From positions 124,001 to 188,000 of the IMG/VR virus record IMGVR_UViG_3300031576_000001: 64,000 nucleotides of DNA; one strand, given 5' to 3'. Under the pieces are notes generated by a model. The model was not told where the DNA came from and made no database searches. It worked only from the letters and a program-made list of their open reading frames with translations. Shown one piece after another: positions 4,107 to 59,299 of the stretch (the first letter of the stretch is position 1; the number at the start of each line of letters is the position of its first letter). Both the position numbers and the translations under genes were made by a program.

Positions 4107-4790
4107 ATGGCAGGCATTGAAACTCGTTACCCGTACAAGGTCGGAACGTCGAGCCAGACCCACTCGGTGGTGTCGCAGAAGAACAAAGTCTACTCGTACC
4201 AAGTCGGGAAGAATCAATACCAGCAAATCGGGGTAATGACCACGTTTGGACTCGACGAGTCTCGCACGGTGGACGTTGTTCGGGGTGTGGGTTTTGGTGA
4301 CCAGATTGCCGAGCTAGTCCCCGGTAACACGGAACCTGTGAGCATTTCCGTAGAGAAGACCTTGCTGTACCTTCTGAACCTATTTCAGGCCATGGGGTAC
4401 AAGGGTGGTGTTGACGGTCTAGCGCGTTCACTCAAACACCACCGCTGGCCGTTTGACATCAAGCAAGAAATGGTGTTCTCGGAGCTAGCTAGTATTGATG
4501 CCCAAGCCTACCCAGGTGCAAAAGCCGCTTCTATTGGTTTCCTCCAACCCGGTATGACTCTCGTACCACAAGAGGTGAAGGCGCTCTTTACCATCTTTGA
4601 GGCGTGCTGGTTTGAGCAGTACGGAACCAGCTATGGCGCGGATCAAGGCATGGTAGCAGAGTCCTCTTCGATTAAAGCCTCAGATGTAGTAGACGGAACA
4701 TCGCAGTACGGTGAGTATATTGACACAGGACTTGCACCAAACATCCAAGGTGCCGGTGCTGGAAAAGGATTCTCCATACGCTTCGGTTTA
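4107..4790 (+). CDS. putative tail tube protein
   Basis: Size, beta-rich character, 'GDQIAELVPG', 'PFDI' and 'EACWF' resemble gp19-like tubes; precedes chaperones and tape measure. First in-frame TTA 4788-4790 (standard code ends 4805). Confidence 0.7.
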
Positions 4791-5728: not shown

Positions 5729-6987
5729 CAAGTGCTGCCTCTGTCAAAGAGGCATATGAGCGTGAACAAGAAAAGCTACGACACGAAGGCAACCTAGAGG
5801 ATGACGACAGTTCGTTTCCTCTCCCCCAGGAGCCCGAGGTGGACCCCCGGGTCTACAAAAGTGTTGAGCCGCTCTTGTTCCGTGGCTTTCTTGCGTTGCC
5901 TGCCACGCTGGGCGATAACCTACGGGTCGTCTACAAGAGCCTCAACCACCATGAGTATGAGCGCCTACAGCTAACCCATGGGTCAAGGGACACTGACTTT
6001 TACGTAGACTTCCTGGCGCAGTCCACGTACCTCTTGGGGGGTCAGAACGTACTCTCTTGGGAGCACCGTGAGAAGGTCAAGCGGTTTTATGGGGAGGTGC
6101 CCCCTCCATTGCGTAACCGGATCTTGACCACGCTCTCTGAGTTGAACCGGCAGGCCAGTGACGGGGTGCGGCTCGTCGAGGCGTACGCCATGGAGACCCT
6201 CTCTCGGCTACGGTGGGTTCAATTGTACGGTCTGGACCTCACGTCAACGGCGGTAACGGGGGTAGAGGGCTCTTCCTTGCTGGGGTACAACTGGGGTCAG
6301 CTTCTCTGGCGGGCATTGAACCGGTACCAGGACACCCGAGAGGACATGGACAGGCATTGGGAGAACGCCAAATTCATCGGGGGGTGCTTTGCAGGCAAGG
6401 GTATCAACAAGGTCCATAACCAGGACCGGCGCCGCAAGCGCGAAGAGATTGAGAACCGTATCGCGCGGAAGGACCAAATCTTGCGTGAGGTTGTGCTACT
6501 TGAGAAGAGCCCTGAGAGGCGTGTCATGCGGGACGGGCACGTAGTCAAGTCAGCTCAAACGACCGAGGAGCTAGCCACCCAGCTTGAGCAGTCACTAAAG
6601 GGTGAGGAGGACTTTCACGACCGGGTTGTACGGGCTGTCGAAGAGTACCACGCCAAGGTCAGGGTTGACCGTGAGGCTGAGCTACAGCGGCTCTATGACG
6701 AGGCTGCCAGCAAGGCACAGGGTCAAGGGCTCACGGGCATTGTGGACCGTAAGGGTCTCTCCCGCGAAGAGGTTGAGCAGCGTATCGCCCGGACGAGGGC
6801 GATCATGGCTCAAGGAACGGCACAGAGAATGGTACGCCCCCCGCCGCCTAGTGAGAACCCCTACGAGCGTTTCCGTCAAGCGCCCGAGCAAAGCGAGCAA
6901 AGCGAGCAAAGCGAGCAAAGCGAGCAAAGCGAGCCTGGTAGCCCCAAGGGTGAGGTTCGTCCTTTGCCCCCTCTTAGGTCAAGATTA
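5725..6987 (+). CDS. putative second tail assembly chaperone
   Basis: GTGA-coupled to upstream gene; 'YKSLNHHE' resembles the motif in 4835; first in-frame TTA 6985-6987 overlaps the tape-measure ATG as TT-ATG (standard end 7011). Confidence 0.55.
6886..6934 (+). repeat. 9-bp tandem repeat GAGCAAAGC x5 (EQS repeats)
   Basis: Five perfect copies plus GAGC, directly visible. Confidence 0.95.
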
Positions 6988-9900
6988 TGGCAAAGGACAC
7001 TGAGGTTCTGAAGTTTGCGGTCGAGCTAGACCCCAAGAAGGCTATCAAGGCTGCCAAACAGCTACAGACCTCTTGGCAAGAGCTTCAGAAGATACCCAAG
7101 GACTACGCCAAGGACAGCAAGAAGTCCCTTGAGGGTGTGCTCACCAACTTCAATAAGCTCACTCGCGGGATGGAGGACTTCAACAAGGCGGCACTCCAAG
7201 CCAAGAAGAACCCCTTCTTGGATTCCAGCCAAAAAGGCGCCATTCAGAAGACCAAAAACCTGAGCCTGATGTTCGCCAGGCTTAACCACCAAACCAAGGC
7301 GCTAGCCAAGGCAAGGGAGAAGGTACAAGCTAAGTGGGACGACGCTAAGGCAAGCGGGGACACGGCTGAGCTAACTAAACAAGCCAGAATCCTGGGGGAC
7401 ATGGAAGCCAAGGAGCAGAAACTCCTGGCGGCTTTTCAGAAGGAAGCTAAGGCTGCTTCTTCGATTGCAGCGGCGTCCAAGGTGGCGGTAGCCGCTTCAG
7501 CGCAAATACTCAAAGAGGCTAGCGAGAATCTAGAGGAGTATGAGGAGCGCTCGGTCAAGCGTGCCAGTGAGCTACGCAAGGAGCTGATGGGTTACGGGGG
7601 TGAGGAGTTTGGTAAGGACTTCACAGAGAACCTGGAGGGGGGTATGTCTGCCCTAGCCTCTAAGTCAGGGGGTGATTTTGCTAAGTCTGTCATGGGACTC
7701 CTCAAGTCCGGGGGGAAGGGACTAGCTGGCATTAGTACAAGAATGCAAGCTAAAGCTGCTATAACCGGCAAGGAGCCCGGCATGATGGGCAAAGCTGCTG
7801 GGGCGGCTGGCGCGGGTATCGGTAAGATTATGGGGGTATTCTCCAAGCTCGGTCCAGTTATAGGGCTGGTCTCTTCTGCTGTGGTGGGTCTGGTCAAGCT
7901 ATTTATAGATGCGCAAGCCGCTGCCAAGGAGTTCAACAAGGAAATACTCACGGGTGCCTCTACGGCTGAGTTTCTGGCCGCGTCCGGGGGTAAGAGCGCC
8001 ATAGCGTTTGCCAACTTGGAGGACACCATGAAGCAGCTACGGGACGCCGCGTTTGACTACACAACCAATACAGACCTTGGAATATCAAGCAAGGAGCACG
8101 CAGCATTCACCAACACACTGGCCAAAGAGGGTGTATCCCTCAAGCAAATCACAGACGAGGCTGCGCGCTCCAATAAAAGCGTGGGTGACTTTGAGAAGAC
8201 CTTGATTACCTCTGGTGTTGTGTACTCCCGTGTTTTCGGGGTGTCTCTGGACGAGATTGCCTCACTTCAGGCTACTATGCAGGCGGACCTGGGTGTTTCA
8301 TTGAAGACCGCAACCGACCAGTTTGCTGAGATCAATATCGCGATGAAGGACTCGGGTATTGCCGCAAACAAGTTCTTTGGTATCGTGCGTAACCTCTCAT
8401 CCGACATGGGTTTTTTCAATCTTCGTATGGCTGAGGCTGGTAAGCTCTTGAAACTTGTGAGCAAGAGCATGAACGCCAAGCAAGCGGAGAAGTTCATTCA
8501 GAACCTCTCCGGGCACTTCAAGGGCCAGAGCTACGCTGACCGTATCCGTGCAACGCTGGTAGCTGGCAAGGGTCAAAAGGGTGGCGCCATTGCTACAGCC
8601 AAGAACCTGGAGGGTGAGCTACAGGGCAAGATCAAGACCCTTGCCACAGAGGCTCAAGGTAAAGGGGTGAACCCAGAGGGTCTACGTAAAGCTATTGCCG
8701 CTGGGGGTAAAGACCTCACCGACTTTATGGCAGCTAATGCAGAAAAGATGACGGGTGCCATGCGTAGTGAGGTTATAGATGCCTCCAAGCAGTCCCAGCT
8801 TGTCCAGGGTGGCAAGAAAGGCGACCTCTTCAGCTCTGCGCGTGGTTTGAAGAACGCGGGTCCAATAGCCGCCCTCAAGCAATTGGACTCCATTGCTGGC
8901 AATATGTTCGAGGGTAAGAAGTTCAACGAACTTTCAGGGAAAGAGCACTTTGCAATGACTAACCTCCCTGGAGGCGGGACGGAAGAATTGATGGACGAGG
9001 TTGACAAATTCCGCAAGGGTGTTGCGGTGTCAAAAGCGGAGATGCTAAACAAAATCAAAAACGACAAGGCCCTTAGTGAGGATGAGGGGCGTTTGCTCGC
9101 ACAGCTAGGGCTCACGGGTAAGAGCAAAGAGGAAATCTCTAAGGGCGTGGCTGGTGCAGACGAGGAGGACTTTTTCAACTCCATGTCAGCAGATCAAAAG
9201 CGTATTGCACTAGAGGGTGAAAACGCTACGGACTTCGCTAAGAAGCAAACGGGTCTAACGGACACATTGATTTCTAAGCTAGAGCGCCTCAGTGAGTTCT
9301 TGATGAATAAGTATTACAATATAATCGTAGACGTGTATGATGCACTTACTGACATGCCTGGTATGGGGGGCTCCTCTAGGAAAGAGCAAATACGTCAAGA
9401 GACTCTTTCTATGGGCGGTGGGAAACAAATGCTAGACATGCTCACAGGGGGTAGAGGCACTCTGCAAGGCTTGCAAGCTAGCTACTCTAAGGAAACGGAC
9501 CCTCAGAAGCAAGCACAACTGGCTATAGACGTGAACAAGCAACAGATGGCAGTAAACGAAGCCTCTGGAAAAGTGTTGAAAGCTATTACAGGTAAGGGGG
9601 GCACTTTCGGCATTGGGACAAGCGATGCTGAAATGGCTCAGAAGGCGGGTGTGAAAGCTGGGCTATCTGAGGACATGAATCGTAACTTTTCGACGTGGAT
9701 CAAAAAAGGGAAAACAGGAGAAGAAGCTGCAAAGCTCGCTGGTCTCTCTGATGATCAGATGGCAAGAGTTGCTGCGGAGGCTATGAAGACAATGGATGTT
9801 CAAGCTCTTCGGACAGTAACAAGTTGGGGTGTAACAAACACGGGTGTTGGTGCCACCCCTACTGCTAGCACCCCAGGCACTACCCAGGAGCTACCACCGC

Positions 9901-10445
9901 CAGCGCCCGAGGCACAGAAAACTGCCGAAGAGACCGCCAAAGCCGCACAAGCCCAGGTCGCAGCTACCGAGGAGCAAACCAAGGTTCTTGACACCAAGGG
10001 CATCAAGCTCGACAAACCCTTCCTCAAGACCAAGATTGGTCCTCAAGTAGAGGAAAGTACCCTCTCGGCGCTACGTACCGCCCTCTTTGAGTTCTACGTT
10101 CTACAACATACACCGCTGGCAGACGTGGCTGAGGCGATCAAGGGGGGTCTGGACCCCAAGAGCGCAGGCGAGAAGCTAGTCGCCGGCATGAAAGAGCAAG
10201 GCAGTGCATTCAATGCTGGCGAGACCGTCAAGGCTAACGCAGCCGGAGGCACCGTCATGCGTCCCGCCCCAGGTGAAGCGTTTGCCTCCGTAGCCCCAGG
10301 GGAGACAATCGTACCCAAAGGTGGCGGCGCGGGGGGCATCACGATCAACGTCAACGTAGGGGGCGCACCGCTCGCTACGATCATCGAGGGTAAGGTCAAA
10401 GAGGGTATCGAGATTTGGCAACGCCGTGAGGCGATGAGAGCCTTA
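6987..10445 (+). CDS. tape measure protein
   Basis: ~1150 aa, Ala/Lys/Gly-rich and helical, with central hydrophobic segment; first in-frame TTA 10443-10445 followed by CCCC-GTG of next gene (standard code runs to 10733, a 284-nt overlap). Confidence 0.85.
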
Positions 10446-10449
10446 CCCC

Positions 10450-11349
10450 GTGGGAAACTTCACCCTACGCAACCCAGAGAACCTACCCAGGCTAGACGCC
10501 CCCGGGGTAGACGCGAAGTACCGTCACGGAGCCGAAGGGCTCCGAGGGGGGGTGCCCATGGTCTTTCAAGTGACCTCTCCGCTGGACGAGCGCACCCTTC
10601 TCTTGCCTCACGCCCTGGTCTTGCATATCAACCCCAAGAGCCTGGACGAGTCGTTCACCAAGAAGGTCGAGCGTATTCAGACCCGGGGCGGTTTCGTCGA
10701 GCAACACTGGTGGGAAGACCTCACCAGCATTAGCGCCTCAGCTACAACGGGTGCCTTCGTCAACATAAGGACCGGGCTAGCCTCCGTCCTACGTAGAGAG
10801 ACCATCGCCTATGACCGGTTTCAAGACCTGAGAGACCTGTACCGTAACAATGGCTCCCTCTACGCACCCAACGGGCAAATCGTGCTTCAGGGCTACATCA
10901 TGCTCCTTTACGACCGGGGCACCTACCTCGGTACGTTCAGGTCGTTTAACTTCGAGGAAACCGATGACAGCCCCTTTGCGTTCTCCCTCAATTGGGAGTT
11001 CAAGGTCGAAAAGACCATCCTCAAGGTGCCCACGGCTCTCGTAGGTCGTAACCTACCCACGCCAGCTTTGCTACAGACGAACCCTCTTGGCAAGACAGAG
11101 CCTACCCCTGACGCCATTGCTGCCAAGCTAAGAGAGTCCGCTGAGAAGGCAGCGCGCGAGACGGCAAACGAGAAGGAGCACCAACGGGAAGTGTCGGGCT
11201 ACATTGCAGAGGGCCCAGCTTTGAAAAGGGCACTTGAAACGGACGTTATCTTTGGCAGCACCACCCCGGACAGCTTTGAGGCTCGCCAGCAAGCAAGGAA
11301 CCTAGCCAAGGGTCTACCTATCACGGGGGGGTTGCGTCCCCCACGTTGA
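10450..11349 (+). CDS. putative tail tube initiator / baseplate hub-associated protein
   Basis: 'LHINPKSL...IQTRGGFVEQHW...YLGTFRSFNFEE..DSPF..S.NWEFKV' tube-like pattern; directly after tape measure. Confidence 0.6.
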   Translation: MGNFTLRNPENLPRLDAPGVDAKYRHGAEGLRGGVPMVFQVTSPLDERTLLLPHALVLHINPKSLDESFTKKVERIQTRGGFVEQHWWEDLTSISASATTGAFVNIRTGLASVLRRETIAYDRFQDLRDLYRNNGSLYAPNGQIVLQGYIMLLYDRGTYLGTFRSFNFEETDDSPFAFSLNWEFKVEKTILKVPTALVGRNLPTPALLQTNPLGKTEPTPDAIAAKLRESAEKAARETANEKEHQREVSGYIAEGPALKRALETDVIFGSTTPDSFEARQQARNLAKGLPITGGLRPPR

Positions 11350-11378
11350 TCCGTGAGGCTGCGCCCTAGACAAGAACC

Positions 11379-13445
11379 ATGCCAGACTATCGCCCCGGTC
11401 AACGTGTTACAACCTCTTTGGAGGACAACGCCAAGTATTACGACCCTGACCTGTACAGTGCGCTCCTTACGTTTTCTAACTCGCTGACACTGGACCCGGA
11501 CGAGCTAAGCGAGAACTTCCTACCTCTTCATGGGGCGAAGCCTAACCCAAAGCCCTTTGTGGTGGGCGTACTACCCCCCAACTTGCCTATCACAGGGCGC
11601 ATTCTGGATCGGTCTGCGTCTATTGCGGCTCAGGAGCAGCTAGGTACGGCTGTCCCACAGACCGTGCCGGCGGGTCAAGCTGTCCCTGGTAACCCCGGTG
11701 CCGCTGGCGCGGGTGGTCCTAACGCTCTCTCCACCGATGCACAGCCTGGCGTGGGGGGAGCCAACCTGCCCCCGTCGTTCTGGAACAAGTACGTAGAAAT
11801 GTGCAACAGGTTGGGTATTCACCCCCTGGAACTGGTCATTGTGATCAACAATGAGTCAGGGTTCAAGCCGGGTAGTCAGAATTTCACCACCAAGAAGGGG
11901 CGTGCCAAAGAGGCGGTAGCCAAGGGGTTGAACCAGCTTACCAAGGCGACGGCTAAGTCCAAAGGAATGACCGAGGAGGAGTGGTCCACCTACCAGAACA
12001 TGAGTGCCGAGGACCAACTCTACTGGGTTGAGAAATTCTACCAGGGTCACGGCGGCAAGGACACACTTGACCTCTACAGGGTTACCTTTGGGGGGTACGC
12101 TGGGCACAAGGATGAGAAGCTCAACAACCCAGACGGTTCCCTCTACGCTTCCAAAGAATGGCAGGCTAAGTACACAGCAGATCATCCCGGTACGGTATGG
12201 CCCTTTCCAGGGAGTAACGACTCTTCCTACTACTCCAACATAAATCTCGACATAGCTGAAGGATCGTTTGCTGCGCTTGTCGGGCATATTGACCCCAAGA
12301 ATCCTCCACGCAAGGGCTGGATTGGTGAATCTGATTTGCGTAGAATCATTGGTAATGGGTACCCTTCTGACCTCAATGACCGTATAGAGGCTGCCCAGAA
12401 GGCAGTGGGTAACAGCAAGGGGACACCACCACAGCGCCCCGGGGCTGCCGGGGGTGGGGGCGCGGGGGGTACTACCAATGCTTGGGCTAGCGGGGGTAGT
12501 AGCGCCGCCCAGGCTGCACACCGCCGCATTAGTAAACTGGCTACAGGGGACGTGAACCTCACCACGGGGCTCGGTCAAGACCTCAGAACCCTCCAAGAGG
12601 CGTATATTCGCGAGGTCTCCGCTCAGGCGGCGGCCATGAGGGATGCGCCCCCCCTCCGCTTGCTCGTCAACCCTAGCTCCTTCAAGGTAGCCTCTGAGAA
12701 GGTCATATCTGATGGTACTGGGGGTAGGTACGGACCCATTGTTGAGCACTGGGGTGACGGTCAAGACAAAATAGACTTCTCTGGTAAGATTGCCGCCTTC
12801 TACACGGTGGACCCCGCGGGCGAGACAAGAGGTTCCGGGCTATCGCGCGCCAGCCGTAACTTCTCAGCCTCGTTCAAGAACTTCATGAGCCTGTACCTGC
12901 TCTATCGAAACAATGGGGCGTTGTACACGCTGGCAGACCCCACGCAGCCCCCCACATTTACCGCCGTGGGTACGGTCTACCTGTATTACGATGGCATTCT
13001 CTATCTGGGCTCCTTTGACACGTTTTCGATTACAGAGTCGGAGGATATACCGTACTCCCTGGAATACTCTCTCACGTTCACCGTGAGAATGGAGTTCCAG
13101 CTTGACTTGCAGATTGACGAGACGTTTGCTTACGGCGCACCACGAAACCTCAGCAAGCAACCCATACAAACTACCAGTGACCCCTTCAACCCCGCGCTAG
13201 CTACTGTCTACAACTCCACGGTCAGGAGCAATGTCAAGAGGTTCGAGGCCAGTCGCGATTGGATAGCAAAGCACCCTGACGAATGGGCTAAGTACATGAG
13301 CGGTACACCGCAGTCTACTACTACGCCCTCTCCGTTGCCAGGGACGGGGACGACCACGCAGCCTGCCACAGCCCCGGAGACCAAGGAACAGACCAACGCC
13401 AGGATCTTCCTCTTGATAAGCAACACCAACACGGGTAAGAAGTAA
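11379..13445 (+). CDS. tail hub protein with lytic transglycosylase-like domain and C-terminal tube-initiator-like domain
   Basis: 'INNESGFKP...GLNQL...MSAEDQL.WVEKFY' lysozyme-like motif; C-terminal domain paralogous to 10450 (LLVNPSS...VEHW...YLGSFDTFSITE..PY). Confidence 0.65.
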   Translation: MPDYRPGQRVTTSLEDNAKYYDPDLYSALLTFSNSLTLDPDELSENFLPLHGAKPNPKPFVVGVLPPNLPITGRILDRSASIAAQEQLGTAVPQTVPAGQAVPGNPGAAGAGGPNALSTDAQPGVGGANLPPSFWNKYVEMCNRLGIHPLELVIVINNESGFKPGSQNFTTKKGRAKEAVAKGLNQLTKATAKSKGMTEEEWSTYQNMSAEDQLYWVEKFYQGHGGKDTLDLYRVTFGGYAGHKDEKLNNPDGSLYASKEWQAKYTADHPGTVWPFPGSNDSSYYSNINLDIAEGSFAALVGHIDPKNPPRKGWIGESDLRRIIGNGYPSDLNDRIEAAQKAVGNSKGTPPQRPGAAGGGGAGGTTNAWASGGSSAAQAAHRRISKLATGDVNLTTGLGQDLRTLQEAYIREVSAQAAAMRDAPPLRLLVNPSSFKVASEKVISDGTGGRYGPIVEHWGDGQDKIDFSGKIAAFYTVDPAGETRGSGLSRASRNFSASFKNFMSLYLLYRNNGALYTLADPTQPPTFTAVGTVYLYYDGILYLGSFDTFSITESEDIPYSLEYSLTFTVRMEFQLDLQIDETFAYGAPRNLSKQPIQTTSDPFNPALATVYNSTVRSNVKRFEASRDWIAKHPDEWAKYMSGTPQSTTTPSPLPGTGTTTQPATAPETKEQTNARIFLLISNTNTGKK

Positions 13446-13449
13446 CCCC

Positions 13450-16400
13450 ATGGCTCGCAGTCCCTTCTCCGGCACGTTTACCCCCAACGTCAGACCTACC
13501 GTGGTCATGGCGCCTGACGCCAAGGTGCTCATCAACGGGGAGAGTGAGCTAATCGGGTGCCCCTCTTGCCGTAAGCAGTTTGACATCAACAAGTTTGTCA
13601 CCAGCGTTCAGGTGGACCTCAACGTAGACAGTGCCCCCGGTAGCGCCACGATTAGCCTCTCTGTACCCAGGCACACCGTAGACGACATCTTCTTTGACGG
13701 GGAGGTCATCCTGTCCCCCATGATGGAGATCGAGGTCTTTGCTAAAGGCTACTTCCTTGTCGAGGGCGTGCCTCAGTATTACCCTATATTCTGGGGATTG
13801 ATAACCGAGGTAGGTGTCTCTCAGTCGGGGAGTGACACCACGGTAAGCATTCAGTGTGCAGACATTCTCAAGTGGTGGGAGCTGTGCATGATCAACGTCA
13901 ACCCGGCGTACCTTTCCCCTGTGGGCACGGGTCAGCAAGGGTGGTCCATCTTCGGTAACGTGCTCTTCGGTCGTAACCCTTACGATATGATCTTCACCCT
14001 GGCTAACCAGTCCTTCGGGGACATCGTGGTTGGTACGGGCTCTCTGGTCTCCCTTCACAAAGAGGCTGACCAACCCAAGGTCTTCAAGGCTGCCATCGGG
14101 GAAATGATGCTCTACTGGGAAAAGAGGTTCTCCCGCATAAGAAGCAACCTCTTGCTGTACGGCGTGAACGGTGTTGCCGTCCGTGGGGCTTCTATCTCCG
14201 AGGAAGTCGCTGCGGGCAAAGCCAAGAACAAAGGCAACTTTGTCTCGTCCGTTATCTTCGGGGCAAATGGCTCTGACCCTCAGTCTGTCTTTGATCCGAC
14301 TAGCCCAGCCGTCACTGCGTTTCGTACACAATTCATGAATGCTGGCGACTTGAACTTTTACCAAGCGGAGTTTCAATCCAAGCTAGAGATCGCCAACCTA
14401 TGCAAGGACGCTATTGGGTTTGAGTTTTACATGGACGTGACGGGGGACATTGTATTCAAGCCCCCCTTTTACAACCTCGACGTGGTAGCTAACAAGCCGG
14501 TCTCTTGGATACAGGACATTGACATTATCTCGGAGGACTTCTCCGAGTCAGAAGCAGAAGTCATCACTCAGATCCAGTGTACCGGCTCACCCTACGGTAA
14601 CATTGACTACGGTATGCCCGAAGAGCTAACGCCCCACGTCACGGTCACGGACTATCACTTGCTAAGGCGTTACGGCTGGCGGACGCACTCTTACGACAGT
14701 ACCTTCATGGGGTCCAACGTGCAAATGTTCTACCACGGTATGGACATTTTGGACCGGATGAATGCAAAGAGACACCGCGGTACTGTGAGTATTCCTCTTC
14801 GCCCTGAGCTTAGGCTAGGCTTCCCGGTCTACATACCACACAAGGACCAGATTTGGTATGTCACGGGCATAAGTCACAATATCGAGTTTGGTGGGCGTGC
14901 GCAGACCACGCTGACGCTTACCGCCAAGAGGGGTAAGTTTCACGCCCCCAAGGGTATCGGTACGTTTCAGAGCAAAGGGCAAGCCAAGCCGCCCCAGGGT
15001 AAGCTCAACCCCAAGTCAATAAGGGCACAGAAGTTTGAACTAAAGCTAGGCGCTGCCGCTACCTTCCCGCCGGATGTACTACAGAAGGACGACGCACAGG
15101 GGGCAGCACCGTATGAGCCCCTCTTGCTCAGGCACCCCAAGACCGGGCGCTCTCTGGGTTACCCTAACGTGGTCATGGTGTACACCCGCCCCTTCAAGCC
15201 TGACCCTGCCACCATGGCTCAGACGCAAGGCAAGAAGCCCAATGGTCCTGTCTCGGCGGTAGCTAAGAAGCAACAAGCGGAGTACAAGGCGAACCAGAAA
15301 GCGGACGCCAAGAAGCAATCCGAGGGACTCAATGCTATCTTCGATGACGACAAGATACAACTTCTCAGGGAAAAGCTGGACCGTAACAAGTACAGCTACG
15401 GTCTTACCACGGCGGGCGTCTACGTCTACGCTTACGACAAGGGGGGCTGGATCAACCAGTTTGCCCTCGTCCCGGGTAGCAATATCTCGGTCCTCAACAG
15501 CCAGGGTGACCCTGACGCCAAGGTGGTACAGCAAAACCAGAGCGTTCTCATCCGTCCTGTGTCCGACGAGCGAGGCTTCGAGCTAGTGGGTAACTACCGT
15601 TACGGTCGAGGCGTCTCTTTGCGTGACGGTTCCCTTGTTATCACGAATGGCAAGACCAATGCGCTGGCGACCATTAGCCTGCAAACGGCGGTTTCCGGTG
15701 ATCTGTTTGCCACGCTAGCGGCTGCCTCTCAGGGGCTCACCACGATTTACACCGGAGAGGGTAACCCCGCCGAGACTTTGGCACAGTTGAACCCCACGCA
15801 AGACCGCGACTTGCAGACCGCGGTTACGCTTCAACCGGACGGGTCCGCTGTACTTATCCAGGGCACACCCAACTTCGTTGACGCCGCCCCGCTGGGCTCC
15901 CCCGAGGAGCAAGGCACCTTCCCCAGCGTAGAGGCGGGTCAACTGTCACGCGCCCTCACGCTAGCCGAGCTAGGCAGGTTCAACGAGAAGGCGCCGGAGG
16001 AGAACTGCGTGTGCCTCTCGGGGCGGCAAGAACTAGCCTTCTTGAACACGGGCTACCAAGTCGAGACGCTGACCGCCAGCGGAGCGGACCCCAGCAAGCT
16101 CTTCGGGAAGCTGGCGGACCTGGATATTACCGTTACTGCCTCTTCTACGGCTCGGTTTACGGGCGTTGACCCGGAGCACCGGAGCCCCCTCCAACCTACC
16201 AAGCTCTCCTACAAGGAGGTGCAGGGTAAGATAGACACCTTCCTTTACAACCTGTACAGCGCCCTAGACGCCCCTCACCAAGCCTACGAGCGCATTCTAC
16301 GTGGGCAACCCCTCTCCGAGGACGTTCTACCCACCACGCCAGGCGCGAGCCCGAATAGCGGCATAGCACCCCCCTTCAATGGGCTACGTAGGCAGGCTCT

Positions 16401-21394: not shown

Positions 21395-21495
21395 TCTCTT
21401 AGCTAGCGGAGGGGTGGAATGTGACCCTACAGAAAGCCGTGGGGTAGCCTCCTTTGACAGAGAGGGCGAGCGCCAAGGGGTGTACTCCTCTTGGC

Positions 21496-21852: not shown

Positions 21853-21866
21853 TAAGCCTACCTAAA

Positions 21867-21998
21867 CTATACAGTGTTCCCATATGGGTCAAAGATGACC
21901 CTGCCACTATTTACGATGTTTTTATCACTGAGCCCCGAGGCGGGGACTCCAGTGACGATCAAGCGGAAACCGTCAAAGTGTATGGAAGCTCAGGGGGT
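21867..21998 (+). repeat. dispersed ~130-bp intergenic element, copy 2
   Basis: Near-identical to 2039-2170. Confidence 0.9.
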
Positions 21999-22022
21999 GC
22001 AAGGCGACCCCAGCAGAAAGTT

Positions 22023-22055
22023 GTGAACGGTACCCTTGGTTGAGTGTAAGAGGGG
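22023..22055 (+). promoter_or_regulatory. GTGAAY-N16-YGTAAGAGGGG promoter/RBS motif
   Basis: GTGAAC-16nt-TGTAAGAGGGG-TT-ATG(22058). Confidence 0.7.
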
Positions 22056-22057
22056 TT

Positions 22058-26300: not shown

Positions 26301-29146
26301 ACAGGGTAAAAAGCTACCCCCAAGGCACCCTTGTCCTTTGGGATGGTGAGCCGTACCACGTAGAGGGGGTCAAGCGAGACGGGGGGGTGACGGTGCTCTC
26401 CCTTGGCGCGGCAACCGACCGGGAGTACGCCGGGGTTTCACTGGCGCGCTCTATCCGACCCGTGCTCCCCGGGGGTGCTGCTGTCAGTACCCAGACGCCC
26501 CTCCTTGACGGTGTGGACCTCCTCTACCGCAAGGTGCCAGGTCAGGTAGGCTCCTTGCTAGAGGGGGTTACCGTGACAACCTCGGGTCAAGTGACGGGGC
26601 TACCCCCTCTGGGTGACAGCGAAGAGCAAGGGGTGGCTTACCGTGGGTACGGCAGCCTAGAGGCCGGGCAGAGTCTACGGGCGAGCTACACCGTTAAGAG
26701 GGTGCCTACGGCGAGCAATGGGTACGCCGGGCAAGTCTTGGTCGCCACGTACACCACATGGTCCCCCGATAGCTTTTACTTCCGAGTTGAGAAGCTGTCC
26801 GATGTGCGCGCAGAGGCAGCCCGGCGCCAGCAAGCCGAGGTTTCAGCGAGTCTACCCTCCTCGGGTCCAAGGCTGAGTAATGACCCTGGGTTGACACTAG
26901 CCGACAGGGGGCGAGCCTCGGTCTTCTACGAAGAGAGCGTGTACCGCAACGATGACGTGGCTTTCCGCTCCTTCCTGCTCTTTACCAATGACCTCGTTAC
27001 CCTCTTGGAGAACGCCAGGCTGGATGCTGTAGGGGTCAACGTGGGGGGGCGTGACGGTCAGCTACGGTTCAACGGCTCGCTAACGAACCCAGCGGTCGTG
27101 ACGGTCAGCGTAGCCCTCAATCAGATTGACGACCTGTACCAAGTAAGCCCTGGACCCTACGTGGTGACAGGTCCACCCTTTGTTGTTACGCCGCAGTACA
27201 CCTATGCCCCCGCGTGGACGCCTGCCCCGCAAAGCCGGTTCTTCAAAGCCAAGAGGCGTCCCTTTGGAGTAGCCTCTGTGGCTGCACTACCCGCGCAGGG
27301 TGACGTGGTTCTTGACCTGGGGGTCCGTAACTTGACCCAAGTGTCTTACGTGAGGGACCGGCAACCCTGGGCGCTTGTCACAGCGCCCGCAGCTTCGGGT
27401 GCCTTTACCGTGTCCGTGGATGACGCTGACGGCGACGCCTACCTCGTCCGCCCCAACTTCGGGGTGGGTAATCAAGTAGACCTCCTACGCCCCGATGGGT
27501 CCGTGGTTGGAGGTAGCCCTTACGAGATAGCCTCCCTCACGCCAACCTCCCTCACGTTCACGGTGGCTCTGACAGACAACGTACCCAGGGGGGCAACGGC
27601 GGTACGCTCTTTGGACGACCTGGCGTACTATCAAGTCGGAAAAGACCTTGGGCTAGACGCAACGGGTGGGCTTCTCACTTACATTGTGCCCTTTCCTCCG
27701 CTGGACGGTTCGGTCCCGCTTGTGCCGGCGGCGCTAGAGGTACTCCCCCCCAACCCGGGGCAGCCTCTTAGCACAGAGGTTTTCCTGTCCCCCGCAGCCA
27801 CCACGCCAGACCGCCCCCCGGTGCTGGACGGTCTAGACCTGGACGACGACGGCGAGGTTAGTTTTCCCTTGCAAAGCCCCACGGACGTTTGCGAGCAAAA
27901 CAGCTTGGGGGTGGGCAGGTTGCCTGACGTGTTTGCTCGGTATGCTGCCCTTGTGAGCGTGACGACACCCACGGAGACCTTCACGGCGAATTTGACGGCG
28001 CTCAACGTGATTACCCGGACAAGCGGGAACTTCGGAATCCTGCCGCTACCCGGTCAACTGGTCCGAATCCTCTCCGGGGTACACGCGGGCACCGCCTTTG
28101 TGCGGGTTGCCTCTGCAACCCTAACGGCGATCACGGTGGACGTACCCTACGGCAGCCTCGACACTGGCTTTACTGCGGTTGTAGGGGTCTCTTTGTTCGC
28201 CTTGACCGGCGCAGGCACCGTCATTGCTTTTGGTCTCACGTTGGAGGATGCCGTAGCTACCTTTCAGACCAACGGGGTTCTACCTGGGTACACCGTGGTC
28301 AATACGGTTACACTGGAGAGAAGCCAGGTCACGGCTGTACCGGACGAGACGCACCTGACGCTGGCTTCCCCGTTGACGCTGGGTGCTATCAATTACAGGG
28401 TAGAGAACCCGTTGTGCTCCTTCTCTGCGCTAACCACGCAGTCTACGGCACTCGACAAGCTGAGAGAGGTTGTGGCGACCAATGACCTCCCTGCCCTCCC
28501 CAGTGAGATAAGGGCGCTAGAGAGGGCGCTGGACCTCATATTCACGGACAGGGCAGGTAACCCGGAGTCTGTCACTGTTACGTTGCCCTCCACGGTAACC
28601 GGTCCCGTCTGGTCTGGCGTGACGCCAGGCGACACCGTGTTCTTCCGAGAGGGTGCAAACAGGGGCGTCTACACGGTGGCTTCCGTGGTGGGCACGGTTA
28701 TCACGGTTTCCGGGGCTCTTTCGCTAGCGGGCTCTGACTTCGTTCGGGTGGTCCAGCTAGAGGGCGTGAGCCAAGAGGGCGTAGTTACGCTGGCTAGCCT
28801 CCTCTTTGAAGTAGACGACTACAACTCGGCATTGATCGCGCTGTTGGTCCAACTAGCGAGCTTTCCAGTGCTTTCTGCATCCTACGCCAACAGGCTGGTC
28901 AGCTCAGAGCTGACCCCTTTGCTTGCGGTTCTTGCTGTGCGTGACCCGGCAGCTTGGGAAACTAGGGTCTTTTCCTTTCTCCGTGGGGGAGAGCGTTTGT
29001 ACGACAAGAGGTTTGCGTGGATAGACGGCAGATTGAACAAGTTGACGGGGACGCTGGCTCGGATAGCGCAGGCAAGGCAACGCCGGCTACAGAACCAGGC
29101 CAGCCTGACCAACCAATTGATACGCCTCCTCAGCCTCAGTGGGTTA
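23354..29146 (+). CDS. very large beta-rich virion structural protein (baseplate/tail associated)
   Basis: ATG at 23354 after TGTGCTACC; ~1930 aa of repeated beta domains with helical C-terminus; first in-frame TTA 29144-29146 (standard end 29254). Confidence 0.7.
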
Positions 29147-39438: not shown

Positions 39439-40602
39439 ATGACTGAGGGTTACGGACGAGACGACTACGGCAGGGGTCGCTACGGCTCTACGCCAGCGCT
39501 GGGGCTTACCAATGCCTTCTCGCTGGGTCCAACCTCGGCGGTATTGCAGTTCACGGCGCCCCTGGACCTTACCCACGGGTCCACGCTGGACCCGCTGTCC
39601 TACAGTATACCGGGGCTCACGGTTCTCTCGGTCCAAGTCCTCTTCCCTGACGTACTCCGGCTGGTCACGACGGTTCAAGGGTGGGTTCTGTACGAGGTCA
39701 CGGTACACCCCTCAGTCAGGAGTACCTCTCGGCTACCCATAGAGATTGACCAGCGCGTAGACACCTTCTCTGGGTACGCCACGACCCCCTCCTTCTTTGC
39801 TACGGCGCAAAGCAGCACAAGGGTCCAGGTCATTGCCGGGGCGGACCTCCTTAGTGACCTGGCGCTGGCCGCAGCCTCGTCCTACCAAGTCTTTGACCTC
39901 CTGGGCAACCCGGTACCCGTCATCCTGGCGACGCCTCGTACCTACCTTGGGGTGACAAGGCGGGTAGACCTTGACCTGGGCGTAGCCCTCCTACCCAACC
40001 AGTTCTACCGGGTGGTCGTGGCCAACGTGGTTTTCACGGTGGACGGTCGAAACCTCGTGCCTAACGAGGCAACCTTCCTGTGGAAGCCCAAGCCGTTGAC
40101 GGTAGCGGCAGCCATCCCCGACTTCAGCGGAGAGGTCTCCGGGGGGCTCTTTGGTACGCCGGCAGGCTTGGTCTTCTTCTCGCCCTCCCTAGAGGACGTA
40201 GCCCCTCTCAGCGCTATACAGATCGACGAGCTATCGGTTTGTAGTCGTGCCTACGAGGTCTATGAGTACCCAAAGCCAGTTGACCCCTTGCCCCTGTCCA
40301 CCTTCGGGGGCTACAACCCAGGGCAGACCAACAACACGGCGTATGTCCTGTGGGCTCCCTTCCCCAGACTAAACGAAGCCAAGATGGCGCTGTCTGCCAT
40401 CTACCCCGAGGTCTACGCCGGGGCTAACAGTGGTCGCTGCGTTGCCGTGCTAGACGAGCCTCATGACCCCCTCTTGGTATCCCTGCTCAATAACCCCTAC
40501 TGGCAGACCTTCGGTACGGGCGTCCTGCACCCCTTCAAGACAGCTAGTAACCTGGCACCTATACCAGCCGGCACCACAACCACAATCACCATCGTCCCCT
40601 TA
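39439..40602 (+). CDS. Ig-like-domain virion protein
   Basis: YG-repeat N-terminus; two Ig-like repeats; first in-frame TTA 40600-40602 (standard end 40635 overlaps next ATG). Confidence 0.65.
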
Positions 40603-41302: not shown

Positions 41303-43909
41303 ATGACATTCAAAGAATACGGTCCTGGGGTGTCTGGTTACCTCGACCCCGAGGAAAGAGCATTCCTGACAGGTGTATTTCAGTCCGCCAAGCCAGTGCT
41401 TGACACAGAGCTGAACCTGGCTTCAGACCTTGAGGACCAGATTAGCCAGGGAGTCCCTCTCAGTGGTACACCCTCTGGGTGGCTCACGCGAGACGCTATC
41501 GACCAGCCTGATAACTTCCCCATCTTTCAGGCTGTAGGCGCGTCAAATACCCTGCAAGTCTCAGGTCCGCTACTAGCTAACGTGAATGGTTGGCTTGTCC
41601 GTGTCACCAACACGGGTATCGCCCCTGGTAACCAGCTAGACCTTGGGGCGGGACCGGCGGGTGCGGCTTCCAAGAGGGTGGACTTTGTACTTCTAGAGGT
41701 TTGGCTAAGGCTTCTCTCGGCGGCTCCGTCTACGGTAGGCAAGAGCCCAGCGGCTCGAATCTGGCGTAACGGTAACGTCAAAGTGTCTCCGGCTGACGAT
41801 CTGGTAGTCAACTTCCCTGATGACATACTCGACGTGAATGTGGGCTCCGAGACGACCAAGAGGGTACAGGTACAATACCGTCTCAGGGTGGTTCAGGGGG
41901 TGGACCTCTTTAGTTACCCGGACGGGATGAGTGACCCCCTCATTGTAGCCCGCACGGTGCCCCCCAACGCGGCGACCCCAGACGGGGCAGTGCCCCCGGC
42001 GCTCTACCCTTACCAGAACCAGGACGCTAACGGGGACACTGGGCTCTGGCGGGCTGGCCTTGGGGACGCAACGTCGGCTTCCGACCTGGGGACCGTGGAT
42101 GGGTTTATGTACGCCATCCCCTTTGCGGCTGTTTTCCGTAGAAACACAACCGCTTTTGCCAAGAACAGTAACCATAATGGGGGTATACTCTCCCCCGGAC
42201 CTAGCGACCGCCCCGATGGTCTCTTTCACAACGTCATTGTCCTAGACGACGTGGCGGACCTACGGCGCCTTGTAGCCTCGGAGTCGTGGTCCCTTCCCGA
42301 AGTTCTACAGCGCAACCTTCGGCTCATGCTGGACAACCAACTGAGAACCGAGTGGGAAGAGACCCCCAACGGGGGCGGGGTGTGGGGTCACAGTAATCTC
42401 TGGGCAGACGAGATTGGGCCCGTAGACACGCCTGGCGCTACACTCATCGGTGATTTTGACGCAGTGCTCCGTAGGTTCAGTGACCGGGCTGTCCTAGAGA
42501 TAGCCACGCTGAGGATCACTGGACCCTTCGTGGACGGGCAAGTCATCACCCTCAACCCCACCGTGCTCCCTGTCTACCCTTACGCGGCTTTCAACTGGGC
42601 GTCCTTTGCACCCTCTGAGGTACGCTGGCTCGACGTGGTAAGCGCCCGCTTTGACGGAGAGGGTGTTGCCGGGGCTACCCACGTTGACGCCCCTATCGTG
42701 ACCATGACCGGCTTTGGTACGGACCCGGTAGGTCCAGTGACACTCACGCTGGGCACGGTCTCGACCATACCCATCACGACGGAGGCGCTCTACGTTGACC
42801 TCCTGATAGCATATCCCAACTTTAGGGGTGCTCAAGGCAGTGGCTTGACCCGTACCCCAGTAGCTAACTACCCCTTGGACGTTACCGGGGCGAGCGGGGC
42901 GGTACAGATCAACAACCCGGTGCAACTACCGGCTGCCGCACCCATCCTCTTTAGCCAGCTAAACGTGGGGTCAGACTTCTCACACCGAGAGGTACGGCTA
43001 CAATACGAAACCCTCTCTCAGGTCGTGCTGGTCAATGCCCCGGCTGCCGTGGGTGTCTCGACGATTGACCTCCCCGAGAGGGCACTAGCTATAACGCTCA
43101 TTGAGCGTAGTCCTTTCCCTGGTCCGTTTGCACCCATCGTGGGGGGGTTTACAATAGACGCCTCGGGGCGCGTAGTCACGCTGACCAACCCGGCAGACTT
43201 TACAACCACCGTGTTGGATCGATGGCGCGTGACCCTGCAAGCGGTGCGCCCTCTACCGCAAAACGGCGAGCAACTGACGCTGTACTACCCCGCGAGGGCA
43301 CCCCAGGCGGTACGAAGTGCCTTGCTGGGCGTCGCCAAGGTTTTTCACCCCAAGCTCGTTGGGGACACCTTGCTAGCCATCACTACGGGTAGCGGTAGCC
43401 AGGGAGAGGGTTACCCATTCCCTTACGCTTACGTGCAAACAGGGGGTGTTTACCCCACGTCAATTGGTACGTTTGGCGGTGAGCATGAGCTAGACGGTCC
43501 CGCGACTCTCTCTGTGTCGGACTTCAACGCCACCACAGGCTGGCTCAAACTTCACCCCTACGTGGGGTACGAGCCCACTGGACCTGTCACCTTTACCAGG
43601 GCGCCCACCGACGCTGACATAGAGGGACGTAGCTTCTTTACGGGCGTACCACCTGGGGACTACATACCCAACACGTTTGCACAATTGCTGAGCGACCCCT
43701 CGCGTCACAAAAACGTACTACCCCTCCTCTTGGAGCTACCGTTTGCCAGTCCGCCTCTGGGCTCGCAGGGTGCCTTGTACTTCGGAATCCTCATGAGGTG
43801 GGCCATGGACGCTCAAAACTCGGTCGTTATGAACCCCGACTTGACACTCAACACCACCACACTGTCCATCTTCCGTACCAAGGGTCTCTTGACCGGAAGG
43901 AAGGCGTTA
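41303..43909 (+). CDS. tail fibre/baseplate-attached protein, paralog of 53823
   Basis: N-terminal 'VFQSAKPVLDTELN' baseplate-docking-type motif; first in-frame TTA 43907-43909 overlaps next ATG as TT-ATG (standard end 43993). Confidence 0.7.
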
Positions 43910-52000: not shown

Positions 52001-53188
52001 GGCGTCAAGGTCAAGTGGAACCCTGTCCTTGGACGGTGGGGTCTGGCGGTCTCTCTTGTGTGGTCCGGTCACGGGGCGGCTCAACTTTACCAGACCGGGT
52101 GGAATGTCAGGTCTCTTCTCGACGAGCCGGCAACAACCCTTGGGGTGGGTGTCCGGGTAGGTCGCGACTTCGGTTTGACTGTGGGAACTGCGTACCGCCA
52201 GCCTGGAATGCGCTTCTTGACGCAGAGGCTCACCCCCCTCTTTGGTCTCACGGCGCCAGACTTTGCATCTAGCTTGCCCCAGGTTATCGCGGATACCGTA
52301 ACCTTGGTCAACTCCTCTCAAAACGCCAAGGTGGGCGACCTCTTTGCAGTTGCAGGGAGAGGGCCAGGGGGCACAGATATTCGCAGAACCGCCACCCTTT
52401 TCGGGGGCGCGGCGCTGGACAATGCCAGCGTGGACATGCCGTGGAATGACGCAACGAACGCCATTGATGTGGCAGTGGGTGATTATGACGCTGTGCCCCC
52501 GGACGGAACCTTTACTGTTGTGGGACGCCTCGCTCAGTACAATTTGCTGTTCAACGAAGGCGCTGGCGTTACCTATACCGCGACAAGTCTTACGGATACT
52601 GATGTCTTCCCAGGGTTCATTACCATGGGAGTGCAACCAGGGGACCGTGTTTACGTGGGCGGTAACGCTTTGGTCTACGTGCTGTCCGTGGCGCCCACCG
52701 TGCTCACCACAACACCCTTTGGGGTGCTCCCCCCCGCAGGCACGCACTACACGGTCACACGTCCCTCCTCTTACCTCTACAACCTGAAGTCCTCGCTAAG
52801 CACAATCTTGCTCACGGGTGACGTGGATGCCGCTACCCAGCGCACCCCCCTCTTGGAGTCTACCGGGGGACACACCCTGGAATTCCTACCCAGAGAGGAC
52901 GTGTTCCTGATTACGCTTGGGTACGGCACGCCTTGTGTAGAGGTAGACGGAGCCGAAGGCGTCGCTCTAAGTAACCTCACCCTCGGGGGTAGCCAGGACA
53001 TCACGGTCAAAGTAGCTCAACACCCCTGGCTTGCTCAGTCCGGGCTTGCCGTGGGCTGCGTTGACTCCGGCTCCCCCCTCTACCCCAAGAGACCTTCTCT
53101 GGCTTTCAGGTTCCCCGTGCCTAGAGAAGCCCCCGTGACGCTAAGCAATGTGGTAAGCCGCACCAAAATGCGGTACAAGGGAGTCTTA
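46097..53188 (+). CDS. very large tailspike/fibre-like protein
   Basis: 'VHLRRGEYRLTSTVTVPPGVKITGEG' beta-helix entry motif and many 'W.G..Y.V.W' propeller-like repeats; first in-frame TTA 53186-53188 follows ~2360 TTA-free codons. Confidence 0.7.
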
Positions 53189-53191
53189 GCC

Positions 53192-58912: not shown

Positions 58913-59299
58913 CTAGGTAGGCTCACCAAGAGGGTTGCGTTCGTTGTAGAGCCGGCAAGCGGTCTCGTGGGTACAGGGGAGACGTTGCCACCAAAGAACC
59001 CCCTTGTCGGGCACGCTGGTGTACCCCCAGAAGGTGTTCTCTCCCTCGTAGGGGACGGCGGGTACAAGCCAGCCGATCTGGTCACCCTCCCCGCTAGCGT
59101 AGGGGCTACGCCAGCCGGGGTCGTGGCTCTTGGCTTGGGCTTTCTCAGCGCAGAGCGCGCAGAAGAGGTCCGTGTAGTTTGCGCAAGTGTTGTGCTCACG
59201 CCACAGGCGGACGTCCCTCGCGCCGCACCCGTCGCAGGCGTAAGCCTGGGGTGTCGCCGGGTTCTGGTAGCTGAAGTCTCGGAAGTTGCGTTCTGGCAT
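58913..59299 (-). CDS. zinc-binding hypothetical protein
   Basis: CDGC...CALC plus Trp-rich 'GDQIGWLVPAVP...WGYTSVP'. Confidence 0.7.
   Translation of the reverse strand: MPERNFRDFSYQNPATPQAYACDGCGARDVRLWREHNTCANYTDLFCALCAEKAQAKSHDPGWRSPYASGEGDQIGWLVPAVPYEGENTFWGYTSVPDKGVLWWQRLPCTHETACRLYNERNPLGEPT

What the first reader, a model, noticed from the sequence alone, without database searches (positions are those of the whole stretch)
10437..13452. Identical spacer after TTA and after TAA in neighbouring junctions
Tape measure ends GCC-TTA-CCCC-GTG (10443-10452), while the gene two downstream ends AAG-TAA-CCCC-ATG (13443-13452). The junction template is the same, with TTA standing where TAA stands. 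The 96 codons after the TTA are Arg/Pro-rich off-frame-like sequence.
Basis: seen in the sequence. Interest (0 to 1): 0.7.

Follow-up and report, generated by a model that had tools for sequence, protein, structure and literature searches.

The report
Phage uses TTA as stop codon
In this giant cave phage and two sister phages, the leucine codon TTA sits where about 28% of genes end, including the tape-measure-like gene; I found no earlier report of such a sense-to-stop code change in a virus of bacteria.

Summary
The tape-measure-like ORF has an in-frame TTA at 10443-10445, followed by CCCC-GTG. Two genes later comes TAA-CCCC-ATG (13443-13452). It is one instance of a genome-wide rule. In the 322,633-bp phage record, TTA is the rarest in-frame codon. 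66% of in-frame TTAs lie in the last 40 codons of table-11 ORFs, against 12.5% for all codons (p~1e-53). Coding signal in the ORF frame collapses after TTA.

- **Tape-measure homologues:** nine of ten database homologues and 15 outgroup loci end within one residue of the TTA.
- **Sister phages:** one has TGA and the other TTA at that position. Across 172 orthologue pairs, TTA interchanges with TGA/TAA/TAG.
- **Re-annotation:** with TTA as a stop there are 363 genes, 103 of them (28%) ending in TTA.
- **tRNAs:** the phage carries four Leu tRNAs but none for UUA.
- **More distant relatives:** they use TTA as an ordinary sense codon. So does the bacterial part of the MAG that holds the sister phage.

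Verdict: TTA is a termination signal in this phage clade. The release mechanism is unknown; no release-factor domain was found. Complications: the sister phage has a lone UUA-reading tRNA, and there are no protein-level data.

The parts
6987..10445 (+). Tape-measure-like gene: 1152 codons plus a TTA terminator. The ATG start overlaps the TTA of the upstream gene (TTATG).
   Evidence: Homologues end here. Orthologues in L002 and L003.
10443..10445 (+). In-frame TTA acting as the stop of the tape-measure-like gene.
10446..10449 (+). CCCC spacer between stop and next start. The spacer is 4 nt in all three phages: CCCC, GGCC, AGTC.
10446..10733 (+). Artefactual table-11 extension of the tape-measure ORF. 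It shows no coding signal or selective constraint in the tape-measure frame.
10450..11349 (+). Next gene (299 aa). It starts with GTG and its N-terminus is conserved in the sister phages, which start with ATG there.
11379..13445 (+). 688-aa protein with a weak SLT lytic transglycosylase domain. It ends with TAA at 13443-13445.
13446..13452 (+). CCCC spacer plus the ATG of the 1078-aa gene (13450-16686).
4788..4790 (+). TTA stop of gene 4107-4790.
6985..6987 (+). TTA stop of gene 5725-6987, overlapping the tape-measure ATG (TTATG). The orthologues end with TAG (L002) and TAA (L003).
29144..29146 (+). TTA stop of the roughly 1930-1985-aa gene that ends at 29146.
40600..40602 (+). TTA stop of gene 39439-40602.
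43907..43909 (+). TTA stop of gene 41303-43909, overlapping the next ATG (TTATG).
53186..53188 (+). TTA stop that splits a naive 2570-aa ORF into a 2363-aa gene and a 205-aa gene (TTA-GCC-ATG, in frame). In L003's phage the two genes lie in different frames.
58140..58142 (+). TTA stop of gene 53823-58142.
62661..62663 (+). TTA stop of gene 62067-62663.
59241..59243 (-). TTA stop of the minus-strand gene 59241-59768.
62675..62677 (-). TTA stop of the minus-strand gene 62675-63298.

Best explanation
In this jumbo phage (a 322,633-bp IMG/VR record from a cave metagenome) and two sister phages, the codon TTA (UUA) no longer encodes leucine and serves as a fourth translation-termination signal. The tape-measure-like gene ends at TTA 10443-10445. 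Four bases later the next gene starts at GTG 10450. The 96-codon continuation is an artefact of reading with table 11.

Shown here:
- TTA has been purged from gene bodies and sits at gene ends.
- At orthologous gene ends, TTA interchanges with TGA, TAA and TAG.
- Sequence downstream of TTA behaves like sequence downstream of ordinary stops.
- The phage's own 38-tRNA cluster covers CUN and UUG but not UUA.

Inferred:
- In the infected cell UUA is not decoded, because host tRNA-Leu(UAA) is scarce, out-competed or inactivated.
- The finished chain is released at UUA by a release-factor-dependent route. This would use either an unrecognised phage adaptor that recruits host RF, or a factor encoded in the unsequenced third of the genome.
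- The only candidate host (an actinobacterial MAG labelled Lysinibacter) reads TTA as Leu, so the altered code would be the phage's own.
For: Genome-wide position and composition:
- 66% of in-frame TTAs lie in the last 40 codons of ORFs, against 12.5% overall.
- TTA occurs 6 times in 45,639 codons of ORF cores, against 723 in 91,278 off-frame triplets.
- After TTA, the ORF frame is the best-scoring frame in only 31 of 60 cases, against about 88-97% after four control codons.

Comparison with homologues:
- Nine of ten tape-measure homologues, and 15 outgroup loci, end within one residue of the TTA.
- At the tape-measure end, the window and L002 have TTA where L003 has TGA.
- Among 13 to 14 local orthologues and 172 reciprocal-best pairs, C-termini align while TTA swaps with TGA, TAA and TAG: 31 pairs TTA/TTA and 61 pairs TTA/standard.
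- Naive ORFs with an internal TTA resolve into two genes that are separate in the sister phage.

Gene organisation:
- With TTA as a stop there are 363 genes, 103 of them ending in TTA, spread evenly over the genome.
- The distance from TTA to the next standard in-frame stop is the same as after standard stops (median 15.5 against 18-19.5 codons, p=0.15).
- Gaps to the next gene resemble those after TAA and TAG, including 15 TTATG overlaps.

Other support:
- The tRNA set has Leu GAG, TAG, CAG and CAA but no UAA.
- Relatives at about 30-55% identity use TTA in ORF cores.
- The sequence is confirmed by an independent assembly.
- Substitutions after the TTA follow the next gene's frame.
Against: - There are no protein-level or ribosome data; everything is comparative.
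- No RF-1, PCRF or Pth domain was found in G000 or in the sister phage's contigs. No GGQ tripeptide is conserved in any orthologue pair.
- The candidate host has canonical RF1 (PAT) and RF2 (SPF) and uses TTA=Leu even inside prfA and prfB. How UUA would be read as a stop is therefore unexplained.
- The sister phage encodes a lone tRNA with anticodon UAA.
- G000 is only 68% complete.
- One or two TTAs are followed by coding-like sequence with no start codon, for example G000 290706-292328.
- The host assignment rests only on co-binning in a MAG.
Confidence: 0.82

Rival explanations
1. UUA is a conditional stop, a 'hungry' codon of the bldA type, not a dedicated one. Ribosomes stall at UUA when tRNA-Leu(UAA) is unavailable, and the chain is freed by rescue or drop-off. 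When a UUA reader is present (host tRNA, or the lone phage tRNA-UAA), read-through gives extended or fused products. TTA would then act as a regulatory switch.
For: - The candidate host is an actinobacterium. In Streptomyces, UUA decoding is stage-dependent, and a uORF carries a UUA about 5 nt before the main start (PMC10732093).
- The sister phage has a tRNA with anticodon UAA, and G000 has a syntenic tRNA with anticodon CUA.
- No release factor was found.
Against: - The tails after TTA show no coding signal or constraint. Distances to the next stop are the same as after true stops. Read-through products are therefore not under selection.
- Stalling followed by tmRNA rescue would tag 28% of the phage's proteins for degradation (my inference).
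- TTA use is the same in the phage with the UAA tRNA (30% of stops) and the phage without it (28%).
Confidence: 0.12
2. Termination happens through a +1 slip at UUA onto an overlapping standard stop (UUA-G gives UAG, UUA-A gives UAA). This would resemble the proposed reading of mitochondrial AGA/AGG and the idea raised for the adpA uORF.
For: G follows TTA in 43% of cases. PMC10732093 raises this idea for Streptomyces.
Against: 49% of TTA ends are followed by C or T, including the tape-measure junction (TTA-C), where the +1 codon is Tyr. A follows TTA in only 8% of cases.
Confidence: 0.03
3. TTA is an ordinary, very rare Leu codon, and the tape-measure protein really carries a 96-residue C-terminal extension that overlaps the next gene.
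For: Table 11 gives an open frame. The candidate host reads TTA as Leu.
Against: - The positional enrichment.
- Homologue and orthologue ends.
- No constraint in that frame.
- Relatives of the same G+C content scatter TTA through ORF cores.
Confidence: 0.02
4. The TTA is a sequencing or assembly error, or a one-off TAA-to-TTA mutation in this genome.
For: TAA and TTA differ by a single base.
Against: - An independent assembly of the same run gives an identical sequence.
- The same usage occurs at about 100 gene ends here, about 124 in a phage from a different assembly, and in a third phage from another run.
Confidence: 0.01

Closest known systems
Leu-to-stop reassignment of UUA in organelles: NCBI table 23 (Thraustochytrium mitochondria), pedinophyte-derived dinoflagellate plastids, and UUA/UUG in Marsupiomonadales mitochondria (PMC12574857)
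   Same: TTA stands where homologues have stops, disappears from gene bodies, and lacks a cognate tRNA in the genome's own tRNA set. It makes up a large share of all stops.
   Different: Here the genome is a virus of bacteria and not an organelle. The candidate host reads TTA as Leu. In organelles the change goes with a mutated RF (RF2 Ser204 or mtRF1a); no such RF was found here, and the candidate host's RF2 keeps SPF. TTG remains a frequent sense codon.
Stop-codon recoding in phages (TAG=Gln, TGA=Trp; crAss-like, Lak and other phages; bioRxiv 10.1101/2021.08.26.457843, PMC9523058)
   Same: The phage's code differs from the presumed host code. The genome is large, carries many tRNAs, and includes a lone tRNA that reads one of its own stop codons.
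   Different: The direction is opposite: sense to stop, not stop to sense. No in-frame standard stops occur in genes and no phage RF gene was found. The change is genome-wide and not confined to late genes.
bldA/UUA regulation in Streptomyces and proposed UUA-triggered bypassing in phage phiHau3 (PMC10732093)
   Same: The context is actinobacterial. UUA is exceptionally rare and its decoding is limiting. A UUA lies a few bases before a downstream start.
   Different: In those systems UUA still means Leu and affects a handful of genes. Here it ends about 28% of genes and is interchangeable with TGA, TAA and TAG.
AGA/AGG at the ends of vertebrate mitochondrial genes (from my own knowledge; not tested here)
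   Same: Unassigned sense codons lie at the ends of ORFs.
   Different: That case is explained by a -1 shift onto UAG, or by a specialised factor. Here the base after TTA rules out a general shift-to-stop mechanism.

Membership tests
Sense-to-stop (Leu UUA to stop) genetic-code variant | The codon stands where homologues have a stop codon, with aligned C-termini. | tested here: met
Sense-to-stop (Leu UUA to stop) genetic-code variant | The codon is absent, or nearly so, from conserved in-frame positions of genes. | tested here: met
   6 TTAs in 45,639 core codons against 723 in 91,278 off-frame triplets. Most internal TTAs separate two genes.
Sense-to-stop (Leu UUA to stop) genetic-code variant | No cognate tRNA (anticodon UAA) is encoded. 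| tested here: inconclusive
   G000 has none among its 39 tRNAs, but the record is 68% complete. The sister phage has no UAA tRNA in its cluster but carries a lone tRNA-UAA elsewhere.
Sense-to-stop (Leu UUA to stop) genetic-code variant | A release factor with an altered codon-recognition motif (in organelles, RF2 Ser204 or mtRF1a). | tested here: not met
   No RF domain was found in the phage contigs. No GGQ is conserved between orthologues. The candidate host's RF1 and RF2 carry the canonical PAT and SPF motifs.
Sense-to-stop (Leu UUA to stop) genetic-code variant | Protein-level proof of termination at the codon. | not testable with these tools
   No RNA or proteome data exist for the sample.
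Phage stop-codon recoding (code 15 or code 4 type) | In-frame TAG or TGA inside conserved genes. | tested here: not met
   Coding density is about 90% with standard stops. Apparent runs of in-frame TAG are antisense shadows of CTA codons. TAG aligns with the stops of orthologues.
Phage stop-codon recoding (code 15 or code 4 type) | A suppressor tRNA is encoded. | tested here: met
   A tRNA with anticodon CUA lies at G000 307803-307877. Its role is unknown.
Tape measure protein | A profile or structure match to a known tape-measure family. | tested here: not met
   No Pfam or PHROG hit. The label rests on length, position upstream of an SLT-domain protein and large baseplate-like genes, and Ala/Lys/Glu-rich composition.

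The most novel reading that the evidence does not exclude
The phage imposes a four-stop genetic code on a host that uses the standard code.

On this reading the phage abolishes UUA decoding in the infected cell, for example by neutralising host tRNA-Leu(UAA), while supplying its own TTA-free proteome and a tRNA set that skips UUA. It releases chains at UUA through a factor unrelated to class-I release factors, or through an adaptor that recruits them.

Host genes that contain TTA would be truncated, and so would those of competing phages. The candidate host's own prfA and prfB both contain TTA. The code change would then double as a host shut-off or exclusion weapon. The lone tRNAs (anticodon UAA or CUA) would act as controllable suppressors.
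Probability: 0.25. Interest if true: 0.97.

Novelty: new variant of a known kind. Interest (0 to 1): 0.9.

Why it matters
All alternative codes reported for phages so far turn a stop codon into a sense codon. Sense-to-stop changes are known only from organelles, where they go with mutated release factors. Six full-text literature searches found no report of TTA, or any sense codon, acting as a stop in a phage or bacterium.

- **For code evolution:** if confirmed, this shows that a virus can run a code with an extra stop in a cell that reads that codon as leucine. It also raises the question of how UUA is recognised without an obvious release factor.
- **For annotation:** standard gene callers give wrong C-termini, false gene fusions and displaced starts for about a quarter of the genes in these genomes. 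One example is the public call of the sister phage's tape-measure gene as 1184 aa.
- **For screening:** the end-enrichment statistic used here (share of in-frame TTAs in the last 40 codons of ORFs) is cheap and could be run over viral databases to find other such codes.

Tried and rejected
- **No near relatives in curated collections.** BLASTN of the region against the phage collection found nothing. A close-relative scan of IMG/VR with the 299-aa protein also found nothing.
- **No family annotation.** Pfam and PHROGs give nothing for the tape-measure-like protein and most of its neighbours. Rfam gives nothing in the window.
- **TAG recoding, suggested by the tRNA-CUA, rejected.** Runs of same-frame ORFs separated by TAG turned out to be antisense shadows of CTA-rich sense genes. 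TAG aligns with orthologues' stops.
- **Selected back-up stops after a leaky TTA, rejected.** Distances to the next standard stop equal those after true stops.
- **+1 slip onto TAG or TAA, rejected as a general mechanism.** Half of the TTAs are followed by C or T.
- **Phage-encoded release factor or peptidyl-tRNA hydrolase, not found.** No RF-1, PCRF or Pth domain and no conserved GGQ.
- **Altered host RF, not supported.** The candidate host's RF1 and RF2 are canonical.
- **Host tRNA-Leu(UAA), inconclusive.** A pattern search in the MAG gave only 4 matches, none of them a tRNA. The pattern was strict and the MAG may be incomplete.
- **Genes next to the lone tRNA, uninformative.** Apart from a weak sub-threshold zinc-knuckle match, the only hits were an ADP-ribosylglycohydrolase and a coiled-coil DUF.
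- **A wider clade, not found.** The next-nearest relatives, at about 53-55% identity in the 1078-aa protein, use TTA as a sense codon.
Full report
**What is at the coordinates**

The window is bases 124001-188000 of a 322,633-bp IMG/VR virus record. CheckV rates it 68% complete, its G+C is about 58%, and it comes from a cave metagenome.

The ORF 6987-10733 (1248 codons under table 11) has an in-frame TTA at 10443-10445, followed by CCCC and then GTG at 10450. That GTG starts a 299-codon ORF. Two genes downstream, the 688-aa SLT-domain gene ends AAG-TAA-CCCC-ATG at 13440-13452.

An independent assembly (Logan) of the source run is identical over 9000-12000, with no variants, at about 12x word depth.

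**The junction is one case of a genome-wide rule**

- TTA is the rarest in-frame codon in naive ORFs of 100 aa or more: 155 in frame, against 862 and 606 in the two off-frames.
- 102 of the 155 (66%) lie in the last 40 codons of their ORF. The figure is 12.5% for all codons and at most 18% for any other codon (p about 1e-53).
- In the cores of long ORFs there are 6 TTAs in 45,639 codons, against 723 in 91,278 off-frame triplets.
- In many cases the TTA is followed at once by a start codon: TTATG overlaps, TTA-CCC-ATG, TTA-GCC-ATG, or TTA followed by a Shine-Dalgarno sequence and ATG.
- After a TTA the coding score in the ORF frame falls from +0.20 to -0.06. The ORF frame stays best in only 31 of 60 cases, against about 88-97% after four control rare codons.
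- For the tape-measure-like gene the scores are +0.40 in the ORF frame before the TTA. After it they are -0.31 in the ORF frame and +0.32 in the next gene's frame.

**Homology at the tape-measure end**

- I searched with the last 399 residues of the naive ORF. Homologues covered at most 74% of the query, that is, up to the TTA.
- In the alignment, nine of ten homologues end within one residue of A1152. The tenth, P0004, has Leu plus an off-frame-like tail.
- P0004's DNA (L002) reads ...AGG ATG TTA GGCC ATG CCC AGA... The closest homologue (L003) reads ...AGG GCT TGA AGTC ATG GCT AGA.... TTA in two phages therefore aligns with TGA in the third. All three have a 4-nt spacer and a conserved N-terminus of the next gene.
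- In 15 more distant IMG/VR loci the homologue also ends, with TGA or TAA, within a residue of this point.
- After the TTA, differences between the phages fall on the third positions of the next gene's frame (50 against 21 and 15; 39 against 17 and 6). These are first positions of the tape-measure frame.

**Orthologues genome-wide**

L002 is contig 1 of GCA_040400085.1, titled 'MAG: Lysinibacter sp. isolate EUL_204'. Contigs 1 (205 kb) and 4 (127 kb) of that MAG are the sister phage.

- Contig 1 shows the same statistic: 62 of 93 in-frame TTAs lie in the last 40 codons.
- Around the window, orthologues of the three phages have aligned C-termini (offsets 0-2) while their stops interchange. One example is G000 TAG against TTA in both sisters. 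Another is G000 TGA against TTA in L003. A third is G000 TTA against TAG and TAA.
- Of 172 reciprocal-best pairs between G000 and the sister phage, 31 are TTA/TTA and 61 pair TTA with a standard stop. C-terminal agreement is at least as good as in standard/standard pairs.
- Naive ORFs with an internal TTA resolve into two genes. In the sister phage these lie in different frames or at different loci.
- The 2570-aa ORF at window 46097-53809 is really a 2363-aa gene and a 205-aa gene. They are separated by an in-frame TTA-GCC-ATG here and by TTA-GAAC-ATG, out of frame, in L003's phage.

**Re-annotation with TTA as a stop**

- Reading TTA as a stop gives 363 genes, against 340 under table 11, with slightly higher coverage. 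The stops are TGA 156, TTA 103 (28%), TAA 57 and TAG 47. The sister phage has 30% TTA stops.
- TTA ends are spread evenly along the genome and over both strands.
- The distance from a TTA to the next standard in-frame stop is the same as after true stops (median 15.5 against 18-19.5 codons, p=0.15).
- Gaps to the next gene resemble those after TAA and TAG, including 15 TTATG overlaps.
- In the window, 16 of 52 predicted genes end in TTA.

**Controls**

- Relatives found through the tape-measure C-terminus (35 IMG/VR loci), and the nearest relatives of the 1078-aa protein (53-55% identity), use TTA as an ordinary sense codon. It is scattered through ORF cores at similar G+C.
- Two relatives have almost no in-frame TTA but no end enrichment.
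- The trait is therefore confined to the three phages. It is not a by-product of composition or of this phage family.

**Translation apparatus**

- G000 encodes 38 clustered tRNAs, including Leu GAG, TAG, CAG and CAA but none for UUA. It also has a lone tRNA with anticodon CUA.
- The sister phage has the same kind of cluster, again without UAA. At the syntenic place, downstream of an ADP-ribosylglycohydrolase gene, it has a lone 76-nt tRNA with anticodon UAA. Each phage thus carries one tRNA that reads one of its own stop codons. I cannot say why.
- No RF-1, PCRF or Pth domain is present in the phage contigs. No GGQ is conserved between any orthologue pair.
- The bacterial contigs of the MAG use TTA inside genes, including prfA and the VRITH-L-PTG motif of prfB. 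Its RF1 and RF2 carry the canonical PAT and SPF motifs.
- If this bacterium is the host, the phage's code differs from the host's. The host link rests only on co-binning, similar G+C and the cave origin.

**Mechanism**

It is shown that TTA marks gene ends and is functionally interchangeable with stop codons.

It is inferred that UUA is not decoded in the infected cell and that the chain is released there. I favour a release-factor-dependent route involving an unrecognised phage component, or a gene in the missing third of the genome.

- A conditional, bldA-like hungry-codon mechanism is the main rival. The actinobacterial context makes it plausible (PMC10732093). The lack of any constraint on the tails argues against functional read-through.
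- A +1 slip onto TAG or TAA cannot be general. Half of the TTAs, including the tape-measure one, are followed by C or T.

**Comparison with what is known**

- UUA-to-stop is known in organelles (table 23; PMC12574857), where it goes with RF mutations.
- Phage code changes known so far are stop-to-sense (bioRxiv 10.1101/2021.08.26.457843; PMC9523058).
- Six literature searches found no sense-to-stop case in a phage or bacterium.

I rate this a new variant of a known kind. It is of high interest, and protein-level confirmation is still needed.

Noticed in passing
G000 307803-307877 (-), outside the window (L068:7803-7877); sister phage G001 C4 121826-121901 (+) = L066:1826-1901: A lone tRNA lies at a syntenic site downstream of an ADP-ribosylglycohydrolase gene. 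Its anticodon is CUA (amber reader) in this phage and UAA (UUA reader) in the sister phage. Each tRNA reads one of the phage's own stop codons. The two are not close in sequence.
   Followed up: partly
G000 21209-31256, outside the window: A cluster of 38 tRNA genes with four Leu isoacceptors (GAG, TAG, CAG, CAA) but none for UUA. It also includes Ile-TAT. The naive ORFs in this stretch are spurious.
   Followed up: partly
L002/L067 = JBBAQX010000001.1 (G001 C1) and G001 C4: About 332 kb of jumbo-phage sequence is binned inside the public MAG 'Lysinibacter sp. isolate EUL_204' (GCA_040400085.1). This is either contamination of the MAG or a hint to the host. Its bacterial contigs read TTA as Leu.
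   Followed up: partly
L002:9501-13866 and L083:3001-10660: Public gene calls in the sister phages are distorted by the TTA stops. The tape-measure gene is called as 1184 aa with a false tail. The next gene's start is pushed downstream in L002, and overlapping calls appear in L083.
   Followed up: yes
window 46097-53809: A naive 2570-aa ORF is really two genes (2363 aa and 205 aa) joined in frame by TTA-GCC-ATG. Neither part has a Pfam match.
   Followed up: yes
G000 290706-292328, outside the window: There is a TTA at codon 430 of 540. Coding-like sequence continues for about 40 codons and no start codon follows. The orthologue aligns only up to residue 380. This may be an exception or a read-through candidate.
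   Followed up: partly
genome-wide (G000, G001 C1 and C4): The base after a terminal TTA is G in 43%, C in 29%, T in 20% and A in only 8% of cases. TTAA is avoided at gene ends.
   Followed up: no
G002 (L069-L072) and G003 (L073-L077): Two distant relatives have almost no in-frame TTA (0.1-0.7 per 1000 codons) but no enrichment at gene ends. This could be a codon-disappearance stage that precedes capture of TTA as a stop.
   Followed up: partly
window 11379-13445: A 688-aa protein has a weak SLT lytic transglycosylase match (residues 144-200), just downstream of the tape-measure-like gene. This fits a tail or baseplate module.
   Followed up: no
G000 about 109-116 kb, minus strand: Long antisense 'shadow' frames interrupted only by TAG (the complement of CTA) give BLAST hits between phages and mimic TAG recoding. 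This is a trap for code-inference methods.
   Followed up: yes
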